A stretch of 64,000 nt of DNA from the NCBI GenBank assembly GCA_025786725.1, contig JAHLTZ010000002.1:310001-374000 (forward strand). The letters are read 5' to 3'. Below, in pieces: positions 1 to 59,119 of the stretch. Position numbers and translations under genes: made by a program. Under the pieces are notes generated by a model that saw only the letters and a program-made list of their open reading frames with translations, made no database searches and was not told the origin of the DNA. Positions within the stretch are counted from its first letter, which is position 1, and every line of letters begins with the position of its first letter. This DNA is from Syncephalis fuscata S228. Taxonomy: Eukaryota > Fungi > Zoopagomycota.

Positions 1-1299
1 GCAATCCTGCTTGTGTTGATGCTGCACATGATGTTGGCTGTCCGTTTGTCATTACCGTACATATGTTGGGAACATATGGTAAGTGTATTAGAAAGAATGT
101 AATTATATGTAACAATGTAATATCTAGGCCATGGGGTGCAACCTTATATACCAAACAACATGCAGCCTATGCCGCCCACATATGAGAATGTAGGCTTTAT
201 TGATCGTCTATACGACAAAATTATTTTGCCTGGAAAAGTATTTTTTGCTATAAAAGAAATTTTGAAAAAAAGAGAGGTCACAATGTCCAAGGCAGGTATT
301 GCACCATACAGTGGATTCGCGGATCTTTGGAGGCACGGATTTATATTGGTTAATAGCTTTATTGGCTTTGAGGTAATGGCACGATTGCGCTTTTAATAAT
401 ACCTAATGATGTTTGTGTAGACGCCTCAACCTTTGCCATCCAACACATTTATGATTGGTCCGCACATATCAAATGCCGTTGAAGCACTGCCTGACGAGCT
501 TGCCGAATTCTTGGATACCCATAAACGCACCGTTTATGTAGGATTTGGGACTGCCTCTGTTTTGCCAATTCATCGTGTTTCAAAAATACTTTATTCATTG
601 CTTGCTGCTCATAGAGATGGTCTGCTTGACGGTGTTATCTGGGGATTAGTGCGGACAGCTGATAACAAAGAATCGATACCGCAAACAATTACCATTGATG
701 GTGTCGACCATAGTGTTGAGGATATGCGTTCTGGAAAGCATCCAGTAATTCGTCTGCTTGATAATGCACCACAGCGTGCTGTATTAGCGCATCCATCTAC
801 TCAGCTGTTTGTTACACACTGCGGCATTAGCTCTATTTACGAAACACTTTACGCTGGAGTGCCAGTTCTTGGCCTTCCAGGCTTTGGTGATCAAATAATC
901 AATGCAAACAAAATGGCTGAACACAAAGCAGGTTTATGGCTGTCTAAGAAGGAGATTAGCCATGACACTTTGAGCGATGCCTTCCATCGACTACTGTCAC
1001 CTGGATCGGAGGAAGCTAAAGAGATCCGTACCAACATTAACCGTCTTCAGCGTATGTTTCATATGGCTAATCGTGATCACAATCGTGGTGCTGATCTTGT
1101 TGAGCTGGCCGCCATCCCCGGTGCTATTCTAGCGCACGAAAGTGCGGATTTCCGCATGCCATGGTGGAAAGCCGGCAACTATGATCTATACGCCTTTATA
1201 CTTTTAATTGTTGCTACATCAATCTATCTGTTTGTTTCTGTCGTGAGATATGGATTTGGTATACTGCGTCTTAAGCAGAAGAAACAAAAGCAAGCCTAA
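1..1299 (+). CDS. UDP-glycosyltransferase (GT1/UDPGT family), copy A, 5'-truncated by window edge; introns 79-127 and 373-420
   Basis: UGT signature APQRAVLAHPSTQLFVTHCGxxSIYE...GVPVLGLPGFGDQ; C-terminal TM helix and basic tail; GT-AG introns join the ORF pieces. Confidence 0.92.
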
Positions 1300-1456
1300 A
1301 GTGTTTTGATTTGAGATTAAAAGTACTGTAAGCTAATAAAACGCAGCTTATGGTACCAAATAAAACAGCAACATTTTATTTGTTAAAATCAAAATTATTA
1401 CTATTTGCAATTAATGAACCAAACAAACTGTTTATTTGTCTACTCAATTTGCTATT
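1..1456. repeat. Inverted segmental duplication, partner of 50129-51584
   Basis: Reverse complement of 50129-51584 matches including both introns and ~157 nt of 3' flank; only a handful of substitutions seen. Confidence 0.95.
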
Positions 1457-2184
1457 ACCTTATTATAGCCATTAATTTTCCATTAAACAATATTCTATTA
1501 TTGGCTGCAATGTTATCCAGTTTAAATGTATTCATCTGCTTCAACAGTTATCGCACTTGGTGTTAATCACATGCACAACCTGTTTACTTTTAATCTTTAT
1601 TACGATTTTCGCTATTTAAAGGTAATAGTTTATACATTTTATAAAAACGAGACTTATATTGTTATGTTTCTAATTTTTAAATTGCAAATTAGATGGCCAA
1701 GCAACACCTTATCCTGGGGTTATTCCATACCGTTAATTACTGATGCCTATTAACACTTGCCTAACACTCAGAATACAATGCGTTTTTAGTCATACCATCA
1801 CAACATTATAATAATGCAAGCAAGGTAGTAACAATGGTTTATTTTTAGATCCTTTAATCAATACAATGGCTTTATATTTTGTTGTAATAATAATCTGCTA
1901 TATACATTTAACAATGCTTAGCCAATAGATAATAGTTATTTAGTCTATTTATAACAAAGTGATATTGTATAAACATAAATATGCTATAACTTTATTATTA
2001 TTACAGCTATTTATTAATCAATTATGCAATAATCCATAATATGCTGTTATATCAAATAAACATGTTGAAATTAATAAAAATAAAAAACGTTTAAGCAATT
2101 AAGCTGAATAAGCAATCTTTTAATAAGATTAGATGTGGAAAGAACATGATTCGCAATGTACAGCAAAAGTAATATGTGACAACT

Positions 2185-3395
2185 TTAATTAAACAGCACA
2201 ATTTTCAATATCCGATATCAGTGTTAATAAATTTTAAATAGTATTTTATGTTACTTACAATAGAATGCTAAATTTAATTATGATGTTGATGCAACAGTGT
2301 CGGTTTGATTTTTGTAGTAATAGGCGGTAAAAAATCAGAAGGCCTTGGTTCACCAATGGCCATTGTACTGAATATACTGTGCATGTTTCTGCTGGCATTA
2401 ACATCGCATTATTTATTTATTCATATAAACTATTGGTCTATTGCTTCATCGTCTAGAATATAACTATATTTCATTATTTTAATAATGACATCTTCTATGA
2501 CTACACTTGTCTTTAAGAAACATTGGCTTGATTATATTTCCTATTACACTCAGTAATTTATTGGCAGTATGCTCTATAACAACGACGTTTAATATTAAAT
2601 GGCATTAATATTTTTATTATATATTATTCTACTGATAAACATGTTTATACCAATAACTTGAATAGTAAACCGTCAATCAGTTTTTGCTACTAAGAAGTGT
2701 TATTGTCGATGCAGTGCTATGCCAAATTTATTTTAATAATCCAATAGTAAGTAGCAGATGATTCAAGTATTGTTTGCTGGTGCAATTATAACTAATTAAA
2801 CTTCACTTTGACTTCCACATTTGGAGTCCTCAAAGCAAAATTTGTTCCAATTCAAGTTGTACTGTTATGCACAACAAACGCAAGTATAATGTTTTCATTT
2901 GACTACTTTGCAATTCACGAGGCCAATTGTTGTTGTTGGCCATGCATAGGAAAATTGATCGAATGTTAATAGAAGCCATTGATTGCCATTCTGCATGTGT
3001 TGTTGCATCTATGTACATCATTGATTATTACGTCTGAATGGTTTCTTCTATTTTCTAATATTCTATTATTGCATTTTGGGCATATTTGTGATGTAAGATA
3101 AGATTAATATAATTATTATAAATGTCGTTTATTAAACAGTCACTTCCCCTATAGCCAATCTGACTAAATAAATGGTATTTTTAACGATTAATATCATAAT
3201 GACAATGTATATATTAAAGCAATAATGATGATAATTAATTGATTAAATTATTTTATTAATAATTACACATGAATTAATTAATGTTGGATGTAATATTATA
3301 CATGTTATAGTAATGGATAAGTGTTTAATTGTATTTAAAAGTGAAGGGGTGAAATGGATAAATGAAAATGTAAGAGTCAAAATACAATAGCTTCC
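2185..3395 (-). mobile_element. Non-autonomous Fanzor-derived element, copy 1 (internally deleted)
   Basis: ~2270-3098 nearly identical to ~29375-30207; ~2919-3315 nearly identical to 53863-54270; minus strand reads YLTSQICPKC...HRCNNTC...MASINIRSIF; terminal motif aaatgtaagagtcaaaatacaatagcttcc at 3366-3395. Confidence 0.8.
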
Positions 3396-3611
3396 TTTAC
3401 TTAATAGTTAATAAATAGACTCATGTAATTCAGTGTCAAAAGATCAAAGCTAACATTCTTTACTTGATTGAACTACACATTGTTGTTCTACTAAACAAGG
3501 AGCTGGATGGTGAGTGACATTAAATATCGAATTATAATGCTTGAATACTTTACGGCAACAATAATATGGATCAACATTTATTTATTGCTATTATTTATCT
3601 ATTGATTATAT

Positions 3612-3832
3612 CTTATTGTAAGTAGCATGGAATATTATTTAACATTATTAACGCTGACATTAGATATTGAAAATTGTGCTGATTAATTGACACTAATTAA
3701 TTCAATTGGAGTTAATGTAGCACTACAACAAATAACACTTTTCAGTAGTAAAAACTGATTGATCGTTTGTTATTCGAGTTATGGATCTTTTTGTTTTTAG
3801 TTTGAGGCTAAGGAGTCAAAGTACAGTAGCTT
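3612..3832 (+). mobile_element. Isolated downstream end of the same element family, in opposite orientation
   Basis: Reverse complement aligns to ~29165-29365 and ~2185-2262; ends in the terminal motif aggagtcaaagtacagtagct (3811-3831), identical to 30481-30501. Confidence 0.7.
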
Positions 3833-4019
3833 CTTTCTTTTAATCACTTGACCCATTGACATCGAGCACACACACAAATACAACAAATATCTCCTTTTCT
3901 TCATTTTTTCCAAGTCATTTCTTTCTATTTTATAGCTATCACAGTTATTTCGCCTACCAATAAGGCATTTTTGTTTCTTTTGCACAGTTCACTGATGCGG
4001 TGTCTTTTACCGTCGAACC

Positions 4020-26472: not shown

Positions 26473-28982
26473 ATGATTCGTGCGTTGGCGCGTAGTAAAA
26501 GCCTGACCACGACCAGTGCCGCCCGATCAGCTCTAGGTCAAGGTAGGTAGTTGGTAGGAATATTCGATTGACAAGCCATAGAATATACTAGCACAGTGGT
26601 AGTTAATAATCGTGCTAAATAGCTTGATCGTAAAGAATCGCGTCCATTATAGTATATATCCACCACTACTTAGTAGTTATACTATAGCGATTATCATATG
26701 TGTTTATTTAATATGGCTGATTCATCACTAATTGATTCTATTTAGCGGTTAGAGGCTTTGCCGTATCATCAAAGAGAAATGCCGAAATTGAAGTGTTTGT
26801 CGATGGCAAATCGGTGATGATTGAACAAGGCGCAGCCATTATTCAAGCTTGTGATAAGGCTAGCGTTGATATTCCACGATTCTGTTATCATGACCGTTTA
26901 GCTGTGGCTGGTAATTGCCGTATGTGCTTGGTTGAAGTAGAGCGATCACCTAAACCAGTTGCATCGTGTGCATTTCCCGTAACACCGGGCATGAAGATTA
27001 AGACAAATACACCGCTTGTACACAAGGCACGTGAAGGTGTTATGGAATTCTTACTGGCCAACCATCCATTGGACTGTCCTATTTGTGATCAAGGTGGTGA
27101 ATGCGATCTACAAGATCAGTCAATACGCTACGGTACCGATCGTGGTCGTTTTTCAGAGTTTGTTGGTAAACGGGCTGTGGAAGACAAGAATTTTGGTCCA
27201 TTGATTCGTACTGAAATGACACGTTGTATTCAGTGTACACGTTGTGTTCGATTTGCCAATGATGTGGCCGGTGCACCTGAACTGGGCACCACTGGTCGTG
27301 GCAATGATATGCAGATTGGCATGTACATCGAATCAATGTTGGACTCGGAAATGTCCGCCAATGTTATTGATTTATGTCCAGTAGGTGCACTTACTTCAAA
27401 GCCGTATACATTCACTGCACGTCCTTGGGAGTTAAAATCAACTGAATCAGTCGATGTTATGGACGCATTAGGCAGCAGTATACGCGTTGATTCACGCGGT
27501 CTTGAAGTAATGCGTGTTCTACCCCGTCTTAACGAAGAGATTAACGAGGAATGGATATCGGATAAGACCCGTTTTGCTTGTGACGGTTTAAAGCGTCAGC
27601 GTCTTACCACGCCATTGGTACGCCGTGGCGACAAATTCATGGCTGCCACTTGGCCAGAAGCGCTTGATTTGATTGCTGCTCGTGTACGACATACACGTCC
27701 TGATGAAATGCGTGCTATTGCCGGTCAACACGCTGATGCAGAAAGTATGGTTGCTCTACGTGATTGGTTCCATCGTCTTGACGCCGAAACACTTGCGGTT
27801 GAAGGCAGCAATGGCCACCGTGCACCAGCTCATGGTGCAGATCTACGTGGCAACTATCTATTTAACACGACGATTGCCGGCGTTGAACAAGCCGATCTTG
27901 TATTGTTGGTAGGCACGAATCCACGTCATGAAGCTGCCGTGCTTAACACGCGTCTACGCAAAGCTTATTTGAAAAATGAGACGGACTTTGCACTCATTGG
28001 ACCCGAGACCAAGTTAAACTATGATTATGACCACTTGGGTGCCGATTTTAAAGTACTCGATGATATTCTAGCTGGATCACATCCATTTGCTAAACGACTT
28101 GCTGAAGCACAACGGCCTATGATTATTGTAGGCAGTGGCGTAACCGAGCACGAGCATGCTGACTATGCTTATGGTCGTGTAGCCAAACTAGTTGCCCAAC
28201 ATAAAGATAAATTCCTACGTGATGATTGGAATGGTTATAATGTATTGCAACGGGTAAGTAGCTATTAGTGCATTGGGTAAATTGTATTAATATAGCTGTT
28301 TATTTATTAATTAATTAATTAACATTAGGCTGCTGGTCGAACTGCTGCTTACGATATTGGATTTGTGCCATCAACCAATGCTGCATCAAAATCATCGGCC
28401 AAGTTTGTCTATTTACTAAATGCCGACGATGTTACGACAGCTGATACACCCAAGGATGCCTTTGTGGTCTACCAAGGCCATCATGGTGATCGTGGTGCAC
28501 ATTTGGCCGATGTTATCCTGCCTGGTCTAGCCTACACAGAAAAGGATGCCACCTTTGTATCCACGGAGGGCCGTACACAAATGACCAGAGCAGCAGTGGC
28601 CGCACCAGGTGCTGCCCGTGAAGACTGGCAGATTATTCGCGCCTTATCTGAAGTAACCGGCAATGCCCTACCATACAATAGTATCGATACACTACGTCAT
28701 CGTATGGCTCAAATTGCCCCCGGACTTGTACGTCATGATACGGTTGAGACGCCAGCCTTCTTTAAACTCGGTATTGATGTATTGGCCACATCTAACGGTG
28801 CCACCTCCACTTTACCGTCATCGACCACACCACTTACGTATGTTATGGATAACTTTTATCAATCTGATCCAATTAGCCGTGCCTCTGCCACCATGGCAAA
28901 ATGTACCGCGGCATTTGTGAATGGACAAGATGGATCTGCAGCCATTGCCGATACTAATGCGGCACAAGCAGCCACTGCCTAA
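26473..28982 (+). CDS. NDUFS1: NADH:ubiquinone oxidoreductase 75/78 kDa Fe-S subunit; introns 26543-26745 and 28254-28328
   Basis: IPRFCYHDRLAVAGNCRMCLVE, HPLDCPICDQGGECDLQDQS, RCIQCTRCVRF, DLCPVGAL. Confidence 0.97.
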
Positions 28983-29159
28983 ATGATGGCCACAGTAATT
29001 ATGGTGGTGGTGGCAAGATAGGTGGATGAATAATACAGTTATTACACTGATATTATTATTACTGCGCGTATCTAACAAATAATTCAATGAATTAGTTTTT
29101 ATAATTGAAATTAAAGCAACATATTCTATACTCTTATTAATTTTGTTTATTTAATTTGG

Positions 29160-30503
29160 TTGAATTGCACTTTGAGGTTCTATTCTTAAACTAAACAAAA
29201 AGATCATAACTCGAATGATAAATCGTCGATCCGTTTTTACTACTGAAAGTGGTATTTGTTGAAGCAGTGCCATATCAACTTTGATTGAATTAATTAGTGT
29301 TAATTAATCTGCGCAATTTTCAATATCAAAATAGATATTAAATAGTATTCATGCTACTTACAATAAATGTTACATTTAATTATGATGTTGATGCAACAGT
29401 GTCGGTTTGATTTCTTGTAGTAATAGACGGTAAAAAATCAGAAGACCTTGGTTCACCAATGGCCATTATACTGAATATACTGTGCATGTTTCTGCTGGCA
29501 TTAACATCGCATTATTTATTCATTCATTTAAACTATTGGTCTATTGCTTCATCTCTAGAATATAACTATATTTCATTATTTTAATAATGATACTTCTATG
29601 ACTACACTTGTCTTTAAGAAACATTGGCTTGATTGCATTTCCTATTACACTCAGTAATTTATTGGCAGTATGCTCTATAACAACGACGTTTAATATTAAA
29701 TGGCTTTAATGTTTTTATTATACATTATTCTACTGATAAACGTTTTATACAATAACTTGAATAGTAAACCGTCAATCAGTTTTTGCTACTAAGAAGTGTT
29801 ATTGTCGATGCAGTGCTACGCCAAATTTATTTTAATAATCCAATAGTAAGTAGCAGATGATTCAAGTATTGTTTGCTGGTGCAATTACAACTATTAAACT
29901 TCACTTTGACTTCCACATTTGGAGTCCTCAAAGCAAAATTCGTTCCAATTCAAGTCGTACTGTTATGCACAACAAACGCAAGTATAATGTTTTCATTTGA
30001 CTACTTTGCAATTCACGAGGCCAATTGTTGTTGTTGGCCATGCATAGGAAGATTGATTGAATGTTAATAGAAGCCATTGATTGCAATTCCATGCCATTCT
30101 GCATGTGTTGTTGCATCTATGTACATCATTGATTATTACGTCTGAATGGTTTCTTCTATTTTCTAATATTCTACTGTTGCATCTTGGGCATATTTGTAAT
30201 GTAAGATACTCGTCTATGGTGACAAAAAGGTAGGACGACTAGCGTTTCTAATGTTCACCATTCTCTTGAACATTCTTGGTATCAACTTGGTAGGCGCAGT
30301 TTATTTGCCGGCCATTGATGAATCAAATAACCTCCACCATATGCAATAATGTTTTTTATTAATGTTCAAGTACGCATGCTATTTATATTGTTATATCCAA
30401 CATTATCATGTAATATATTATTGAATAAAACAATAATATAACGATAAGAAAAAGAGTATGAAATGAGTAAATAAAAATGTAGGAGTCAAAGTACAGTAGC
30501 TCC
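29160..30503 (-). mobile_element. Fanzor-bearing DNA transposon relic, copy 2 (most complete)
   Basis: Terminal motif 30475-30503, inverted counterpart at 29898-29920 (19/23 match) and a degenerate one at ~29161-29181; contains Fanzor pseudo-ORF; repeated at 2185-3395 and 53863-54312. Confidence 0.82.
29985..30350 (-). pseudogene. Fanzor (TnpB-like RNA-guided endonuclease) C-terminal RuvC-II/Zn-finger/RuvC-III fragment
   Basis: Minus strand across 3 frameshifts and 1 stop: IIAYGGG/FDSSMAGK*TAPTKLIPRMFKRMVNIRNASRPTF/VTIDEYLTLQICPRCNSRILENRRNHSDVIINDVHRCNNTCRMAWNCN/MASINIQSIFLCMANNNNWPREL. Confidence 0.85.
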
Positions 30504-30561
30504 TTTAATTAATTAATTTATTTTATTGTGTTCTCTTTTAAGTTGCTGTTATTGTTGTACT

Positions 30562-32189
30562 ATGTCACTCGAAGTATTCTGGGATAAACTTGACCGTGAG
30601 GTCGCTCTTATGGCCCAGGAATTACTTAATAGTCGGTTCCGTAGTGCGCCAAAGCCTGATATTATTGGCGATTTAGTATGTACACATCTCGATTTCGGTT
30701 CACAACCACCTGAAATAGAGATTGTTGACGTAACGGACCCATTTCCCGAGTTCTACTTGCCTGATCCCCAGCATACTTTATCGATTCGTCGTAACGATGT
30801 TATTGTAGATTCAACTACAACTACACCTAATATGGACAATAACTATGAAGCACACCACTATCATAGTTATAACTATGAGAATGTAGATACAAGCCATGAA
30901 CAATACCAACACCAAGCACAGACATCGTTACCACTTCATGATAATGGATTGGCAGTCTATACAGTTCTACCAACTTCTGGACACCACTCTCCACATAACA
31001 ATGGACAGCATAAATCAGTAACAGCAACGACTAATAATACAGGATGGCCATTGCCAACTAGTGGTGACAATTCTTTTCATGATGAAATGAATGGACCGTT
31101 AATGAATACTGAATCTACTGGCTATCATTTATTGAATCAAAATGAACCGTCTACAGCAATGCCATATACAGCATATGAGCAACATTTAATAGCAGAAGAA
31201 TTGCCTAATCAATTAGAGGCAACAGTAAGTGATGCATTAATGGAACAGAATCATGAAGAGGATAGAATACAGCACACATTACCAGATACCTATCATACAT
31301 CGCCTATAACAGCAGTGCATAGTTCACCATTATATACAGCACATAATGAAGGTTTATATTCAAATGGTTCATATGTTAATACACCAACCACTATAGTGGC
31401 CGGATCATCATCGGGCATGGTTGTTGGACCGGAGAAGAGAGACAGTGATGTACAAGTACAGGTTAAAATAGCTTATGAAGGGAATCTACAATTAACCATT
31501 GCAACTGAATTACGACTTAATTTTCCATCTATGGCTTTTCTGTCATTGCCTATTGAATTGACAGTAACATCATTTTCATTTTCTGGCAAGTAGTGTATGA
31601 GTTGTGTTATAGCACCTTTAGTAATGTCTTAATAATATCAATAGGTACAGCAGTAATTGCCTATCTACATGATAGAGTCAATTTCTGCTTCATGGAACCA
31701 GACGAACCGGGACAAAGTTTAATTAAGGATTTACGTGTTGAATCACAGATTGGCGATGCACGTAAACATGGTAAGTAGTAATTAAATGTACAATATGAAT
31801 ACTAATGTTTTACCGTCTATAGTACTCAAAAATGTGGGCAAGGTTGAAAAATTTGTTGTTGATTTATTACGACAAATTATTGATCAAGACTTGGTATTTC
31901 CATGCTATAGTTCAGTTGATTTAGTTGGACCCGAGACAAACGAGGGTGAAGGTGAAGAAGACGAAGATGAGGACGTGGATGATGAAGACGAGGATGAGGA
32001 TGAAGATGAAGGCATGCCTATGGAAATGCTAGGCCACATCCAGATATTTTATTATATGGACATTATGTAGATCAGCCATTAAATAACTTTTATCAACCAT
32101 CTACTTCACTATCGGGTACACCATTCGCTGTTGTATCTTCACCGCTTAATGAGTCACCGATAATGGACCCTGATGCGGTGGATGATTAG
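30562..32189 (+). CDS. MDM12: ERMES complex SMP-domain subunit Mdm12; introns ~31586-31644 (GC-AG) and ~31771-31822; C-terminus uncertain (32070, or 32189 with frameshift)
   Basis: MSLEVFWDKL...FGSQPPEIEIVDVTDPFPEFY...NFPSMAFLSLPIELTVT...ESQIGD...LKNVGKVEKFV...LVFP. Confidence 0.92.
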
Positions 32190-32534
32190 AGATGTTTATT
32201 TGTTTTATTATTCTAATGTATATGTATTAATAAATTGAATAACAATGCTATAGTGTTACAACTACTTGATTTATATAATAGCGATATTCTAATTTATAAT
32301 TTTGCTATGTTATATTAGTTAACTTTTTTACATATTTTATTTCTTTTAATATCTTCCACGTTAGAATATAAATAATAGCGAAGCTATGCGTAGGCGATTA
32401 AGTACAATGAATTAAACCATAGCAAATAAAGTAGTGACAAACAAATACTAATTTTAAATAGGCTGTGCTCATTGTATAATCAGTCAATACACGATATAAT
32501 AAATACATAATAAAAATAATGTAAGTAAATGGTG

Positions 32535-49747: not shown

Positions 49748-50285
49748 GCATTTGATCCCAAATCATATTAAATGACTAATGAATTGGTTAATTTAATGTA
49801 ATTCCATTAACATAAATAATATAAACAAATAAATCGCTAATAGTACTGCTAAAATAGAGCATACAACTAATTGCAGTATGTTAATATTTGCAAATAAAGT
49901 GTTTTTTTTTAACAATAGTAATAGTATGTGTTGTTTTAATCCTTTAAATAAAGCCGTAACAAACAACTGAACAACATGCAATCTTGATATGGCAATCAAC
50001 TTGTTATGCAATAGCTATTTAAATAGTAACTTGCTTCAATAACTAGAATAATAAAGCTAGTTCACCAGTTCTTCCTCGTACATTACGACTAATATCTATA
50101 GGCTACTATAATATATTTTAATTAAAGCAATAGCAAATTGAGTAGACAAATAAACAGTTTGTTTGGTTCATTAATTGCAAATAGTAATAATTTTGATTTT
50201 AACAAATAAAATGTTGCTGTTTTATTTGGTACCATAAGCTGCGTTTTATTAGCTTACAGTACTTTTAATCTCAAATCAAAACACT

Positions 50286-52092
50286 TTAGGCTTGCTTTTG
50301 TTTCTTCTGCTTAAGACGCAGTATACCAAATCCATATCTCACGACAGAAACAAACAGATAGATTGATGTAGCAACAATTAAAAGTATAAAGGCGTATAGA
50401 TCATAGTTGCCGGCTTTCCACCATGGCATGCGGAAATCCGCACTTTCGTGTGCTAGAATAGCACCGGGGATGGCGGCCAGCTCAACAAGATCAGCACCAC
50501 GATTGTGATCACGATTAGCCATATGAAACATACGCTGAAGACGGTTAATGTTGGTACGGATCTCTTTAGCTTCCTCCGATCCAGGTGATAGTAGTCGATG
50601 GAAGGCATCGCTCAAAGTGTCATGGCTAATCTCCTTCTTAGACAGCCATAAACCTGCTTTGTGTTCAGCCATTTTGTTTGCATTGATTAATTGATCACCA
50701 AAGCCTGGAAGGCCAAGAACTGGCACTCCAGCGTAAAGTGTTTCGTAAATAGAGCCGATACCGCAGTGTGTAACAAACAGCTGAGTAGATGGATGCGCTA
50801 ATACAGCACGCTGTGGTGCATTATCAAGCAGACGAATTACTGGATGCTTTCCAGAACGCATATCCTCAACACTATGGTCGACACCATCAATGGTAATTGT
50901 TTGCGGTATCGATTCTTTGTTATCAGCTGTCCGCACTAATCCCCAGATAACACCGTCAAGCAGACCATCTCTATGAGCAGCAAGCAACGAATAAAGTATT
51001 TTTGAAACACGATGAATTGGCAAAACAGAGGCAGTCCCAAATCCTACATAAACGGTGCGTTTATGGGTATCCAAGAATTCGGCAAGCTCGTCAGGCAGTG
51101 CTTCAACGGCATTTGATATGTGCGGACCAATCATAAATGTGTTGGATGGCAAAGGTTGAGGCGTCTACACAAACATCATTAGGTATTATTAAAAGCGCAA
51201 TCGTGCCATTACCTCAAAGCCAATAAAGCTATTAACCAATATAAATCCGTGCCTCCAAAGATCCGCGAATCCACTGTATGGTGCAATACCTGCCTTGGAC
51301 ATTGTGACCTCTCTTTTTTTCAAAATTTCTTTTATAGCAAAAAATACTTTTCCAGGCAAAATAATTTTGTCGTATAGACGATCAATAAAGCCTACATTCT
51401 CATATGTGGGCGGCATAGGCTGCATGTTGTTTGGTATATAAGGTTGCACCCCATGGCCTAGATATTACATTGTTACATATAATTACATTCTTTCTAATAC
51501 ACTTACCATATGTTCCCAACATATGTACGGTAATGACAAACGGACAGCCAACATCATGTGCAGCATCAACACAAGCAGGATTGCTAAAGTCGCATATGAT
51601 CACGTCAGCCGAGTTGTCACGAATCCATTGACGATAGAATTGAACATTTTCAACGTAGTTTTGCATGAGCATGTCAAGCACCCAATTAATTAAGTCCGTT
51701 AATTTCATTTCTTCATCGGAAAATAAAGCCTGACGAGACATTTCTAAAAACATAGCTTTATCCATTGGATTGGCGCCCATATCTACAGGACGTAACATAG
51801 GATGGTCCTTCAGCCACGAAGCTAACGTATCGTTGTAGCCAGCAAATGCTACTTTATGGCCGCGTGCAGCCAGGACATCACCTATAGATAGCTGGGGCGC
51901 TGCATGGGACTTGGTGCCCATCGCAGTGCTAATAAGAACATTCAACGGACGGCTGCCGAAGCTGGCGGGTGTTGGCCCAGAAGTATTCTGCTTGGTTGGT
52001 GCATTTACGTTTTTAGCGGATATATACGCTGACTTAGAACACAATATACAACTAAGTGCAAGAAAACAAAATAGCAACTTTTTACAAAGCAT
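50286..52092 (-). CDS. UDP-glycosyltransferase (GT1/UDPGT), complete copy B, two introns
   Basis: MLCKKLLFCFLALSCIL signal peptide, GTKSH catalytic His region, ARGHKV, DVIICD, UGT signature, C-terminal TM. Confidence 0.93.
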
Positions 52093-53640: not shown

Positions 53641-53862
53641 AAATCTCTTTACGCAATCAATTGTAATGATTTAGATAGTTGACGAGTTGATTAGATTAAA
53701 TTGTGTTTAAATGATCATTCACAATAAATACTAATATAATATAATAAAATTATTATTTCCATAAAATAGAATTGATTAAATATAACAGAACATTGTATCA
53801 GTAATAATATTAAACATTTAAACAAAAAATGTAACATACTATTTGATTTCATTGAAACATTT

Positions 53863-54312
53863 GAGGCCAATTGTTGTTGTTGGCCATGCATAGGAAAATT
53901 GATTGAATGTTAATAGAAGCCATTGATTGCGATTCCATGCCATTCTGCATGTGTTGTTGCATCTATTTACATCATTGATTATTACGTCTGAATGGTTTCT
54001 TCTATTTTCTAATATTCTATTATTGTATTTTGGGTATATTTGTGATGTAAGATCAAGATTAATATAATTATTATAAATGTCGTTTATTAAACAGTCACTT
54101 CCCCTATAGCCAATCTGACTAAATAAATGGTATTTTTAACGATTAATATCATAATGACAATGTATATATTAAAGCAATAATGAAGATAATTAATTGATTA
54201 TATCATTGTGTTAATAATTACACATGAATTAATTAATGTTGGATGTAATATTATACATGTTATAGTAATGAAATGAGTAAATAAAAATGTGAGAGTTAAA
54301 GTACGGCGCTCC
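53863..54312 (-). mobile_element. Non-autonomous Fanzor-derived element, copy 3 (truncated)
   Basis: Near-identical to ~2919-3315; retains RMAWNRN; ends in aaatgagtaaataaaaatgtgagagttaaagtac, similar to 30461-30494. Confidence 0.8.
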
Positions 54313-54470
54313 GTGTAATAATAATAATTTTAATATATTATAGAAAAATAAAAATAATTGATCTATATAAAACATTTACAAAGATTACTAAAATATACAA
54401 GTGAATCTAAAATATAACAGCTTTATATAGTTAAGCAAACAAATTGTTTATTAATATGATTCAATTATAA

Positions 54471-56012
54471 TTAAATCTTAAGATACCATCCTCGACTATC
54501 CATAAGCATGGCCATTGGAACGTACAATAACGATACCCATACTCCAGACCATACCAAACTGTTAAGGCGCATTGGCAACCAACTAGCAAATACATACTGG
54601 AATGTAACAGACCATAGACTTCTCTCTTCTCCATTAGCACCGGGTGCAATTGGAATAGACATGACACTGGCAGCAATCAGTTCAGAGGCCATATAGATGG
54701 CGAGTGGATTCTTGCCGACAGCAAGACAAGCATTCAAAAATAGCTTCGTTGGTTTGGCTACAATAGCCGATGCACTTTCGCTTAATCGAACATAGTCAAC
54801 GACATATGTCATTGTAGCAAGTTCCATCAGTGATATTGAGCCGGCGAATAAAGTAAATGTTGGTGTCCAAAGCGGCTTGCTAATAGGAATGACTGGATTG
54901 AACAAATAAGCAATTAAAGCAAATCCAGCCGATAATAAAGACCAAGACGAGATATGCTGGAGTTGACCAAACGAGCTACGTAGCGCTGTACGAGCACCCA
55001 TCACCTGTATACCAACACGTACACCAAGATAGCAGCTTAGCACTGCAGTCACGTGTGAAAGACTGCCTTCTGGATCAAACGACTTGCCCTGGTAGTTGTG
55101 TTCTGGTCCAAAGATATGCGAATCAAAGTAGGACTCGACAGAACACTCCATATCAAAATGGCCACGACCACAGCCGGGTACATTCACACCAAACGTTAGG
55201 CCAAGCCAAATGGCAAGTGCCGTTGCGGGAAATATCGTATTAAATGCTAGATGGCGCTGGGCCCGTTTTGTGCGATGTAACATGGTTTTAACAGCGCCTT
55301 GCGTTTCGCCATCACAATCTTCAGGTTCTTCTGTCGTTGGTGGTATATCCGGCCGAAGCCATGCAAATGCACCGGCACACACAGCGTAAGCTATACCTAA
55401 GCGCTGCAACACACCGGCCGGTCGCCAATGAGACGCAATATTGGGTGTTGTAAAGGGAAAGTTTGTAATGAACATGCCAAGTAGGATTAATAACGAAGAA
55501 CGTTTCATAATACGCACAGCGACCTGCATCCCCGTGCCTTTAAGCCGACGGCCGGCCAATGGTACAGCAAGCCCCATAACAAAGAGAAAATTGGGAAAAA
55601 CGGAGTCAGCAATCGAGAAGCCAAGCCATTCAGGATGTAACAAATAGGAGAAGGCTTCATCTTCAATTTGGTAGTTCACGAGAATCATTAGGCAAACGGT
55701 AAAGCCACGCAATACATCGAGCGATACGAGTCGACCGTTACCACCATCACCGGCGGGAGGATTGGGCGCAGTTGATGGTGGTGGCAATACGGCTTCTGTG
55801 TCATCCGTCATTTCAGGATTTGTGTAATAATCATTTGTTTTTTCATTAAGAACAGTATGGTTGTTGGCTGTCTCTGATATTATGATGGTGGTGTTTTCTT
55901 GCTGTTCCGACCGCGTCACATTTTCATTAATGACTGCAGTAGCCTCAATGGATGGCGACGACGGACTAGTTGTGACGGCGGTGGTAGAGGCGGCCATCGT
56001 TGGATCAGCCAT
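54471..56012 (-). CDS. HGSNAT/NagX-like transmembrane glucosaminide N-acetyltransferase, intronless
   Basis: RLVSLDVLRGFTVCLMILVN, LLHPEWLG (catalytic His region), ADSVFPNFLFVMG, GVLQRLG, FDPEG, PISKPLWTPTF. Confidence 0.9.
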   Translation of the reverse strand: MADPTMAASTTAVTTSPSSPSIEATAVINENVTRSEQQENTTIIISETANNHTVLNEKTNDYYTNPEMTDDTEAVLPPPSTAPNPPAGDGGNGRLVSLDVLRGFTVCLMILVNYQIEDEAFSYLLHPEWLGFSIADSVFPNFLFVMGLAVPLAGRRLKGTGMQVAVRIMKRSSLLILLGMFITNFPFTTPNIASHWRPAGVLQRLGIAYAVCAGAFAWLRPDIPPTTEEPEDCDGETQGAVKTMLHRTKRAQRHLAFNTIFPATALAIWLGLTFGVNVPGCGRGHFDMECSVESYFDSHIFGPEHNYQGKSFDPEGSLSHVTAVLSCYLGVRVGIQVMGARTALRSSFGQLQHISSWSLLSAGFALIAYLFNPVIPISKPLWTPTFTLFAGSISLMELATMTYVVDYVRLSESASAIVAKPTKLFLNACLAVGKNPLAIYMASELIAASVMSIPIAPGANGEERSLWSVTFQYVFASWLPMRLNSLVWSGVWVSLLYVPMAMLMDSRGWYLKI

Positions 56013-56904: not shown

Positions 56905-59119
56905 TTAAATGTCATATAGCTGTCGTGCATCCCCATCTGTATAACCTAGCAGGTAGAGCACATATTTGAGACTTTTTTGGTTAATACGTGCTCTTGCCTG
57001 TTCTTGTACGCGAGGCTTAGCATCGAATGCGATGCCTAGGCCAGCCTTGGCCAGCATCCATAAGTCATTGGCACCATCTCCCACAGCGACTACTTGGTCA
57101 AGTGACACCGATTCTGCCTGAGCAATGACTTCAAGTAGCTCAGCCTTGCGTTCCCCATTAACGATGGGTCCCACAGTCTCTCCAGTCAATGACTGGCCAT
57201 CTGGTGTCGTCTTTAGCTAATACGTCATGGTTTGCATTACCAATTAATTATCGGCATGGCTGGCCATCATTTCTAGTACTCACCTGGTTGGCAAATGCAT
57301 AATCGAGACCCAGTTCATTTTTGACAAAAGTTGCAAGTGGCATAAATCCACCTAAATAAAATGGTGTTAGATTAGAAAAGGTAAATAAATTAATATTAAA
57401 ATATCTACCAGAAATAACCGCCAACTTGAATCCAAGTCGTTTAAGTGCTCTACATAGATAGTGTGCGCCCTCTGTAAACGTCAGTTGATCTCGAACTTGT
57501 GCGAGTACTGAAGTTGGCGTGCCTTTCAGTAGTGCAACACGACGACGTAATGATTCGTTAAAATCAATCTCTCCATTCATTGCTGCCTCAGTGATAGCCT
57601 ATAATTATAATGATATATTAGCGTTTATCATTTAATTGCTACATTATTGTGACTGTTATTCAGCGCAATTACTAACCGCTACTTTGTCCATAACACCGGC
57701 ATGTCGTGCAATCTCATCGATAACCTCTTGTTGAATAAGTGTTGAATCCATATCAAATACCACAAGTCGCTTGTTTCTTCTGAATACATTATGCTGCTGT
57801 AGAGCAACATCTGTGGCGTGTTGTGTACTTAGCTGGAACAGCTTTTCACGTAGTGCAACAAGATCAACATCATTAGGTACACTGAGCTGATAGTCAGCAC
57901 AGCACACACGGCCAGCATTGAGACGGGACATCTTCTCGACGGAAATACGTTCGGCAAGTAGTAGTTTCGTCCAATCGTTAAGAAACGTTGCTGTAAGACC
58001 ATGTCGATTCAGTACAGTAGCTGCATATTTAACACGTCCAGCATAAGGTGCTTCCTCAATCGACTGAGTAATGGCTGAATGATCGCTGTTATGCGGTTCA
58101 AACTGTAATTGGGCATCCCATTGGCGTGCGGCTTCAGCCAGATCGCGGAATAGCTCGACCCGTTCATCGGTAAGCCGTAGTAGTGCAGCAAATGTTACTT
58201 GATGATAAAGACGACTCAACATGAAATCTTCAACGTCGGCCGCATAACGAGCTGCACAATCGAGTACACAGCCAATGATGTCGGTACCGTGCGGACCTGA
58301 CATAGTAACTAATATACGCTGGTGAGGCAGTTGCGACGCAGGTGGAAACCAGTTCTTGCGCTCATCGTTACCCATTCGTTCTACGATTGAGTTTGATGGC
58401 AATAGCGCATCGGCCACTTCTTCAACGGCATTTGGCACAGTTGTAGTAATTGAAGGGTCAACCGTGGCTGCAGCGACTGCTTGTTCCGCTGCTTGTACAG
58501 CTGAAATGGTGGGCGCAATAGCACTGGCCACAATGCTGGCATCATGGGCCTGATCAACTGTCGTCTTTATACTTTCCAATAAACGTTGCTTCCACGTACT
58601 TAGTGGCTGAAAACGTACAAGTGGCGTCACAGCAATACGTAATAAATAAGTTTCGCCTAAACATAGGCCCGTATAACGATCGTGCTTTTTTAATATCTTG
58701 GTAATGGCCGTGTAGTTAAGAAATGCGAATGACTCGACCTGTACAATACAACGCAACGCATCTGATGTTGTAAGCTTGTTAGCTGCAAATGCCTCGGCTG
58801 CTTTCGCCACTTGATAGCAAACATGCTCGGAAGCACGCGCCACTTCCGTATCCAATTGATGGAAGAACTGCGGTACCGTTTGCTGAAGCGTCGTTAACCT
58901 TGTGGCTAATTGCGTGCCAAATGACTCTTTAGCCAGTTCGGGCCCGTCTAGCTTGCTGTTCGCCGTATTGGTGGGCAATAGCGCGTTGAGGTGTAGCGAA
59001 CCAGGCTGCAACTTCTCTTTAATAAACCGTTTAAGATACGTATAATTGACACACGCTGCCTTCCAGCTATCTTCCGGCAGCAATTCCTTACGCTCTTCTA
59101 AATACTTTGCAAACTTCAT
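56905..59119 (-). CDS. SPX domain - tandem ACT-like - HAD phosphoserine phosphatase (SerB) fusion, 4 exons
   Basis: SPX: MKFAKYL, NYTYLKRFIK, LNYTAITKILKKHDR; ACT-like ILVTMSGPHGTDII; HAD motifs LVVFDMDSTLIQQEVIDE, VISGG, GDGANDL. Confidence 0.9.

What the first reader, a model, noticed from the sequence alone, without database searches (positions are those of the whole stretch)
29985..30350. Hidden Fanzor (eukaryotic OMEGA RNA-guided nuclease) family, reconstructable from three copies
Seen: the minus strand, not captured by the ORF track, gives IIAYGGG/FDSSMAGK*TAPTK...VTIDEYLT (D-E at 30209-30214), CPRC (30179-30190), CNNTC (30101-30115), WN.. and MASINI. Copy 1 supplies LTSQICPKC and copy 3 supplies WNR, giving a consensus IDEYLTSQICPxC-x~20-CxxxC-xxx-WNR(N)xMASINI. 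Established: this motif order (AYG.., DEYxTSQxC, CxxC zinc finger, WNRDxxAxxNI) is the RuvC-II/Zn-finger/RuvC-III signature of TnpB/Fanzor proteins, and the style fits Fanzor1. The RuvC-III Asp codon reads AAT (Asn) followed by a 1-nt gap in copies 2 and 3, and no RuvC-I half is visible, so these copies are dead. Inference: three copies in 64 kb imply a high-copy family, and an intact parent may exist in this genome or a relative, possibly an undescribed Fanzor lineage.
Basis: partly seen in the sequence, partly recalled or inferred. Interest (0 to 1): 0.92.

Follow-up and report, generated by a model that had tools for sequence, protein, structure and literature searches.

The report
Dead fungal Fanzor transposon relic family
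This is one of several hundred broken leftovers of an RNA-guided DNA-cutting gene (Fanzor1) carried by a small transposon in a fungus that parasitises moulds; no working copy was found here, but intact relatives in moulds show an unreported sign that their guide RNA may be made by splicing.

Summary
Observation confirmed. The motifs are the last ~120 codons of a Fanzor1 gene (family A), inside a 1,346-bp non-autonomous element (29158-30503). The element has 29-bp GG-ended inverted repeats and an 8-bp target duplication, and it also carries the tail of a second Fanzor (family B). The host is a Syncephalis species with about 460-570 candidate copies, ~9% from consensus. The lost RuvC-III Asp is CpG-type decay of WNRD. 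No intact family-A parent was found: a full-length relative matches only residues 767-912 and later. The nearest intact proteins are Mucorales Fanzor1s (~45% over the C-terminus), which fold like SpuFz1 but are under 17% identical to any solved Fanzor. The 3' end keeps an omegaRNA-like scaffold. Insertion sites show a one-sided A-W-T motif before the duplication, a candidate TAM. So the element is ghost-like and probably MULE-mobilised. Side result: 13/21 related loci (control 4/88) have a spliceosomal donor right after the scaffold, often with the first acceptor AG at the transposon end, which suggests a spliced omegaRNA. Family B has the donor, family A does not; splicing is untested. The scan had noted this family many times elsewhere in this genome.

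The parts
29158..30503 (-). Whole composite non-autonomous element, 1,346 bp (Fanzor A tail, A end, spacer, Fanzor B tail, B end), between NDUFS1 and MDM12
30504..30511 (.). Target-site duplication, copy at the GGAGCT end; preceded (element sense) by AAT
   Evidence: 7/8 match to 29150-29157
29150..29157 (.). Target-site duplication, copy at the GGTTGA end
30475..30503 (-). Left terminal inverted repeat, GGAGCT type, 29 bp
   Evidence: core motif 220 times in the genome, reversed control 0
29985..30350 (-). Fanzor1 family A C-terminal remnant (bridge region, RuvC-II Glu, C4 zinc finger, decayed RuvC-III); frameshifts and a stop; ~124-bp deletion at 30351
30209..30214 (-). D-E codons; E is the alternative RuvC-II glutamate just before the zinc finger
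   Evidence: family trait per PMC13565253
30080..30085 (-). RuvC-III RD codons decayed to CN by two CpG-type transitions
29954..29973 (-). Predicted omegaRNA stem-loop 1: 7 bp, loop ATAACA, shared with Mucorales Fanzor loci
29892..29945 (-). Predicted omegaRNA stem-loop 2, folding the family-A right inverted repeat (29892-29920; here internal and without its GG)
   Evidence: consensus z -3.6; window z -2.3
29398..29508 (-). Fanzor family B extreme C-terminus (DVNASRNMHSIF, RuvC-III Asp kept)
29309..29361 (-). Candidate spliceosomal intron in the family-B 3' RNA region: donor GTAAGT at 29361-29356, acceptor CAG; 60 nt in the B consensus
   Evidence: same donor, size and branch pattern as host introns proven by RNA contigs; splicing itself not shown
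29158..29179 (+). Right terminal inverted repeat, GGTTGA type
2185..3833 (-). Copy 1 composite: B end in reverse (3613-3833), truncated A subfamily (2794-3394), B tail (2185-2405)
53841..54313 (-). Copy 3, truncated A subfamily

Best explanation
A ghost-like, non-autonomous cut-and-paste element derived from a Fanzor1 transposon of the Mucorales type. SHOWN: a discrete 710-790-bp unit (plus composites) with GG/GA-ended 29-bp inverted repeats, 8-bp target duplications and hundreds of copies. It holds only the last ~140 codons and the 3' non-coding end of the Fanzor gene, and it has decayed by transitions. INFERRED: (1) a DDE transposase acting in trans, most likely a MULE, spread the already truncated master. 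(2) Transcripts running out of the GGTTGA end fold into a two-hairpin omegaRNA whose guide is the duplicated target plus flank. (3) While an intact Fanzor existed, it used these RNAs to cut empty alleles next to an AT-rich TAM (A-W-T just before the duplication, or overlapping its first A), so that repair copied the element back. This explains why the 3' end is what all copies keep and why the insertion bias is one-sided. (4) With transposase and nuclease lost, the family is now inert; this copy's A scaffold is buried inside a composite and cannot read a flank guide.
For: Unit and ends. TSD: 65% identity at 8 bp against 38% across pairs, p<5e-5, also at the variable positions 5-8. One-sided bias: TT at -10/-9 in 21/34 GGAGCT ends against 5/26 GGTTGA ends, Fisher p 0.0015; ATT 17/34, p 2e-14 against background. 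Scaffold: consensus z -3.6; the 7-bp first hairpin matches the 7-bp SL1 common to solved Fanzor1 RNAs, and its loop is shared with Mucorales loci. Only 3' ends survive. Ghost loci and a 3' excess are precedented (PMC10432273; PMC3627910). Mucorales '(MuDr)' Fanzor elements have 31-42-bp TIRs starting GG/GA and 9-bp TSDs. MULE is the only transposase family found among five tried. The Mucorales PpFz1 TAM is ATN.
Against: No transposase gene was seen between these ends. The hAT and KDZ blanks had no positive control. The TSD is 8 bp, not the 9 bp of the known MuDR-type elements. The target bias could come from the transposase alone. Hairpin covariation is modest (6.7/8 own pairs against 5.4 for mismatched arms), and single decayed copies fold weakly (z -0.8 to -2.3). 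The RNA evidence is contigs of mixed copies only. Only ~75 loci with 1.5-kb flanks could be read.
Confidence: 0.75

Rival explanations
1. The Fanzor tail is passive cargo of an ordinary MITE; the one-sided target motif belongs to the transposase, and no guide RNA from these copies was ever used.
For: The consensus itself has frameshifts and a stop, so the master was dead before it spread. The bias follows the GGAGCT end even where family B points toward it.
Against: Several independent deletion subfamilies all keep the same 3' end and scaffold. The scaffold pairs with the inverted repeat and with the first duplicated bases. A symmetric transposase dimer is expected to give a palindromic bias (general knowledge).
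Confidence: 0.3
2. An intact or intron-split Fanzor still exists in this fungus (unassembled, or of another family) and uses these copies as a standing guide library.
For: Family RNA is present in a spliced RNA run. Mucorales relatives have introns. There is one weak RuvC-I-side hit at C317:733822. An unchecked note reports a 1.1-kb gene with three RuvC motifs (s1-640391).
Against: Best own-genome match to a 912-aa relative is 91 bits and starts at residue 801; none of the top 50 starts before residue 767. The longest open frame among scored copies is 274 aa with a stop inside the match. No young copies were seen (86-94% to consensus).
Confidence: 0.12
3. The mobiliser is not a MULE but another 8-bp-TSD transposase (hAT, Merlin, IS4-like), or the inner part (TA|CTTTG...CAAAG|TA) is an older Tc1-type Fanzor element captured by new ends.
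For: 8-bp TSDs typify hAT and Merlin (knowledge) and ESvi-1B. The Helicostylum relative has TA|CTTTG ends and a Tc1-like DDE ORF.
Against: No IS1595, Tc1 or hAT domain was found here, and hAT ends do not start GG (knowledge). The nested-origin idea is compatible with the best explanation.
Confidence: 0.3

Closest known systems
Spu-1 / SpuFz1 and its ghost loci (Spizellomyces; PMC10432273)
   Same: Fanzor1 fold of intact relatives (Foldseek E 5e-14; profile E 3e-13); short TIRs; many copies that keep ends and RNA region without a whole gene; TIR folded into the second RNA hairpin.
   Different: 15% identity; TA TSD there, variable 8-bp TSD here; Spu-1 has intact genes, none found here; these copies keep part of the ORF.
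MuDR-type Mucorales Fanzor1 elements ROr-4, PBl-3, MCi-4 (PMC3627910)
   Same: 31-42-bp TIRs starting GG/GA, long variable TSD, no transposase inside.
   Different: 9-bp against 8-bp TSD; those encode 1,165-1,245-aa proteins; no C-terminal motif match was found in the paper's supplement text (line breaks may hide it).
MCi-2 (Mucor) and CRe-1/2/3 (Chlamydomonas) Fanzor1 elements (PMC3627910)
   Same: One-sided AT-rich motif at the 5' side of a partly variable TSD; excess of 3' ends.
   Different: They lack symmetric TIRs (Crypton-like, Helitron2) and have TSDs of 11-12 or 7-19 bp.
PpFz1 (Parasitella; PMC11423790)
   Same: Mucorales Fanzor1; ATN TAM; 7-bp SL1; its yeast-derived omegaRNA contains CAG|GTAAGC after SL1.
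   Different: 11-12% identity to the intact relatives of this family; different SL1 loop.
Uncharacterised Mucorales Fanzor1s (Mucor circinelloides P0147, Helicostylum P0151, Thamnidium P0001, Rhizomucor P0003)
   Same: 40-45% identity over the C-terminal ~135 aa; short DNA stretches 70-75% identical; ATAACA-loop hairpin.
   Different: Full length with DPG; long TIRs, mostly TA-flanked; splice-donor signature after the scaffold, which family A lacks.
IStrons (TnpB with a group I intron; PMC10690162)
   Same: Splicing signals coincide with a transposon end next to an omegaRNA (analogy for the relatives only).
   Different: There a self-splicing intron removes the whole element and competes with the guide RNA; here a spliceosomal intron would sit inside the omegaRNA and create it.

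Membership tests
TnpB/Fanzor | [TS][TS]xx-C4 zinc finger-X(5,50)-RD (PF07282) | tested here: met
   RD kept in 5 copies, GAT in 11; window copy decayed
TnpB/Fanzor | RuvC-I Asp (DPG in Fanzors) upstream | tested here: not met
   absent from the copies read and nearly absent from the genome; present in intact relatives. This lowers 'active nuclease', not 'derived from Fanzor'
Fanzor | Alternative RuvC-II Glu about six residues before the zinc finger | tested here: met
   DEYLTxQIC; criterion
Fanzor1 | Closer to Fanzor1 than to Fanzor2/TnpB; long REC/WED with TDG motif | tested here: met
   tested through intact relatives: profile E 3e-13 to SpuFz1; fold hits to Fanzor1 E<=2e-9 against >=2e-3 for TnpB and Fanzor2; TDG in alignment
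Fanzor1 | Encoded in a eukaryotic (non-IS607) DNA transposon with TIRs and TSD | tested here: met
Fanzor1 | Structured omegaRNA between stop and right end, with SL1 and the TIR in the scaffold | tested here: inconclusive
   predicted fold and shared loop; no Rfam hit; discrete RNA not shown
Fanzor1 | RNA-guided, TAM-dependent dsDNA cleavage | not testable with these tools
   needs a reconstituted RNP from an intact relative
MULE/MuDR | GG/GA termini and 8-10-bp TSD | tested here: met
   range from general knowledge
MULE/MuDR | MULE transposase encoded between the same ends | tested here: inconclusive
   20 MULE hits in the genome, one 0.9 kb from a family repeat; upstream module U not identified
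Merlin / Tc1-mariner / hAT | Matching transposase domain in the genome | tested here: not met
   0 hits; the hAT search had no positive control; the TA TSD of Tc1 is not met either

The most novel reading that the evidence does not exclude
In this Mucorales-type Fanzor1 clade the omegaRNA is matured by the spliceosome. An intron starts right after the scaffold hairpins and ends at the last AG of the transposon, so a long TIR is removed and the scaffold is joined to TA plus flank, which forms the guide. Family B in this window keeps a decayed version of that intron. Family A solved the same problem by folding a short TIR into the scaffold, and used a TAM that lies outside a variable 8-bp duplication.
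Probability: 0.5. Interest if true: 0.85.

Novelty: new member of a known kind. Interest (0 to 1): 0.55.

Why it matters
The relic itself is ordinary: dead Fanzor1 copies in fungi are known, and no enzyme can be recovered from them. Two things raise its value. First, dozens of readable insertion sites give a testable TAM prediction for an uncharacterised Fanzor1 subclade, and they challenge the rule that the whole 3' TSD is scaffold, since here the TSD varies. Second, the relatives point to a spliced guide RNA. If true, that explains how Fanzors work in elements with long TIRs and ties a eukaryotic RNA-guided nuclease to the spliceosome. It would also mean that omegaRNAs mapped in yeast or in vitro (perhaps PpFz1's) can have the wrong 3' part. 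A possible host-to-parasite transfer from Mucorales is suggested but not shown.

Tried and rejected
I did not seek those letters by another route, so C68:536972, C317:733822, C351:15327 and the locus of s1-640391 were not read. Helitron2 was considered (terminal mini-hairpin, asymmetric ends) and dropped once a fixed 8-bp TSD appeared. Merlin, Tc1, hAT and KDZ searches were blank. Pfam on pieces of the upstream module U found nothing, and U's best copies do not overlap the MULE hits. A 'two divergent Fanzors in one parent' model was dropped, because A and B occur both head-to-head and in tandem. Rfam: nothing. RNAalifold on decayed copies recovered only part of the hairpin. The C-terminal tree is poorly resolved (6 of 30 branches well supported); it neither joins A with B nor proves transfer. 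phmmer of a single relative found no PDB entry. No RNA joint at the family-B donor appeared among the listed joints. Literature searches found no report of a spliced Fanzor omegaRNA, but the library is incomplete. Consensus sequences of this fungal transposon were built only inside scripts, with X at breaks.

Full report
Observation. Six-frame translation shows every motif at the stated coordinates on the minus strand, split over three frames. Copies 1 and 3 are as described. The 54-aa open piece hits PF07282 best but under cut-off; an unbroken sister copy passes it at E 2e-8. The host is an AT-rich fungus with introns, 29 Mb; a window gene is 78% identical to its Syncephalis plumigaleata orthologue, so the host is a Syncephalis, a genus of mycoparasites; Zoopagales mycoparasites mostly attack Mucoromycota. 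The element lies between NDUFS1 and MDM12 (and sequence).

Family and anatomy. DNA and protein searches give 574 and 461 candidates, and 26 places pass the PF07282 cut-off. Thirty loci define a sharp 710-790-bp unit. Its inverted repeats are 29 bp, with two end types, GGAGCT and GGTTGA; the core occurs 220 times against 0 for the reversed control. Flanks carry an 8-bp duplication: 65% identity against 38% across pairs in 13 clean pairs, p<5e-5, also for positions 5-8 alone, and no other length from 4 to 12 comes close. In the window the mobile unit is a 1,346-bp composite, 29158-30503, with a 7/8 duplication. It holds the A tail, an internal A end, a spacer and the tail of a second family, B. 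A and B occur in tandem or head-to-head elsewhere, so composites are common.

State of the gene. Copies are 86-94% identical to consensus, with 79% transitions. At RuvC-III, 40 of 49 hexamers are CGCGAT or its CpG transitions, and 11 keep the Asp codon. The ancestor therefore read WNRD and the Asn is decay. The consensus still has frameshifts and a stop, so the master was probably dead before it spread (inference). A profile of the RuvC-I half finds one weak hit that lacks DPG. A 912-aa relative matches only from residue 767 onward in its 50 best hits, top score 91 bits. No intact family-A parent is evident. Caveats: only the best candidates are scored, introns split matches, longer stretches could not be fetched, and an unchecked note claims a three-motif gene elsewhere on this contig.

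Relatives. The best hits among 1.8 billion proteins are Mucorales or unnamed (E to 1e-23), with full-length members in Mucor, Parasitella, Helicostylum and Rhizomucor. Their profile hits SpuFz1 first (E 3e-13). A model of the Mucor protein (mean pLDDT 65, higher over the folded core) matches the three solved Fanzor1s at E<=2e-9 and TnpB/Fanzor2 only at >=2e-3, at 11-16% identity. So this is Fanzor1, from a subclade with no solved member. A and B do not group together, and the tree is too weak to prove transfer from the host fungi.

RNA and target. The last 100 nt of the A consensus fold into two hairpins (z -3.6). The first has 7 bp, as in all solved Fanzor1 RNAs, and an ATAACA loop shared with seven related fungal loci whose stems differ in sequence; the covariation control is modest. 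The second pairs the inverted repeat and reaches the first duplicated bases, in line with TIR and TSD being part of the scaffold (PMC10711439). The first base after CC is A in 23/26 ends. Upstream of the duplication at the GGAGCT end, TT occurs in 21/34 against 5/26 at the other end (p 0.0015). I read this as a TAM-like bias (inference); PpFz1 uses ATN. A spliced RNA run holds contigs of the family, but not provably of this copy.

Mechanism. Shown: a TIR element with an 8-bp TSD, amplified without a whole gene, keeping the 3' end. Inferred: mobilisation in trans by a MULE, the only transposase family found, and similar to the MuDR-type Fanzor elements of Mucorales. Also inferred: guide production from the right end, as for ghost loci, and restorative homing by a now lost Fanzor (model). 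Rivals are passive cargo, a hidden live nuclease, or another transposase.

Side result in relatives. A GTAAG(T/C) donor lies within 160 nt of the Fanzor end in 13 of 21 related loci, against 4 of 88 control ORF ends; the loci are not all independent. A branch-like CTRAY often follows 35-60 nt later. Where a TIR could be defined independently, the first AG after it is the element's end in Mucor, Cunninghamella and an ENA contig; in Helicostylum the donor is mutated but the run to the TIR end has no AG. Four such stretches of 163-219 nt hold 0-2 AG, all near the donor, against 14-22 CT, although G-poor composition explains part of this. Most of these ends read AG|TA, so splicing would restore GTA at the joint. 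Family B has a 60-nt donor-branch-acceptor unit like the host's proven introns; family A has none. The published PpFz1 RNA, mapped in yeast, also contains CAG|GTAAGC. Counter-reading: GTAAG can pair with an upstream TTAC as a 4-bp second hairpin, as described for PpFz1, or the intron may serve only the mRNA. No paper on this was found. No splice junction was observed; probability about 0.5.

Verdict. A real, dead, high-copy Fanzor1-derived element, and a new member of a known kind. Its interest rests on the TAM prediction and on the spliced-omegaRNA lead, which can be tested with existing RNA-seq.

Noticed in passing
L077, L078, L080, L084, L085, L090, L093, L102, L103, L105, L106 (3' of the Fanzor stop): Spliceosomal donor right after the omegaRNA-like hairpin, often with an AG-free run to the transposon's terminal AG; candidate spliced omegaRNA.
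   Followed up: partly
L086:6923-11343: Helicostylum element with 143-bp TIRs and TA flanks, an intact-looking Fanzor1 and a divergent Tc1-like DDE ORF: a candidate autonomous parent type.
   Followed up: partly
L084:6657-11373: Mucor Fanzor element with ~130-bp TIRs ending CAACCTAG; its GGTTG start resembles one end type of the Syncephalis family.
   Followed up: partly
L064, L067, L074, L075: A third Fanzor family (C) in this genome, also broken.
   Followed up: no
L038:1-1110: Module U, upstream of A in about 133 candidates, with Cys/His-rich decayed frames; possibly a MULE N-terminus, not identified.
   Followed up: partly
L034, L035, L041, L060, L071 downstream of A: Module D, with a short decayed frame that recalls a Tc1 C-terminus (from memory), although no Tc1 DDE domain was found.
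   Followed up: no
window 1-1462 and 50123-51584: 99.4% identical inverted duplication of a UDP-glycosyltransferase gene region.
   Followed up: no
window 57656-59119 (-): ORF with SPX and ACT domains.
   Followed up: no
window 54471-56012 (-): HGSNAT-like acetyltransferase in one open frame; relatives in Zoopagomycota, then Streptomyces.
   Followed up: no
window 29205-29248, 29752-29819, 3717-3782: A ~70-90-nt module from the family-B subterminal region recurs twice in the composite; it folds no better than shuffles.
   Followed up: partly
run X6 on window 27600-32400: Another sample differs mostly by C>T and G>A (90 of 103 listed places), in line with strong deamination of these repeats.
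   Followed up: no
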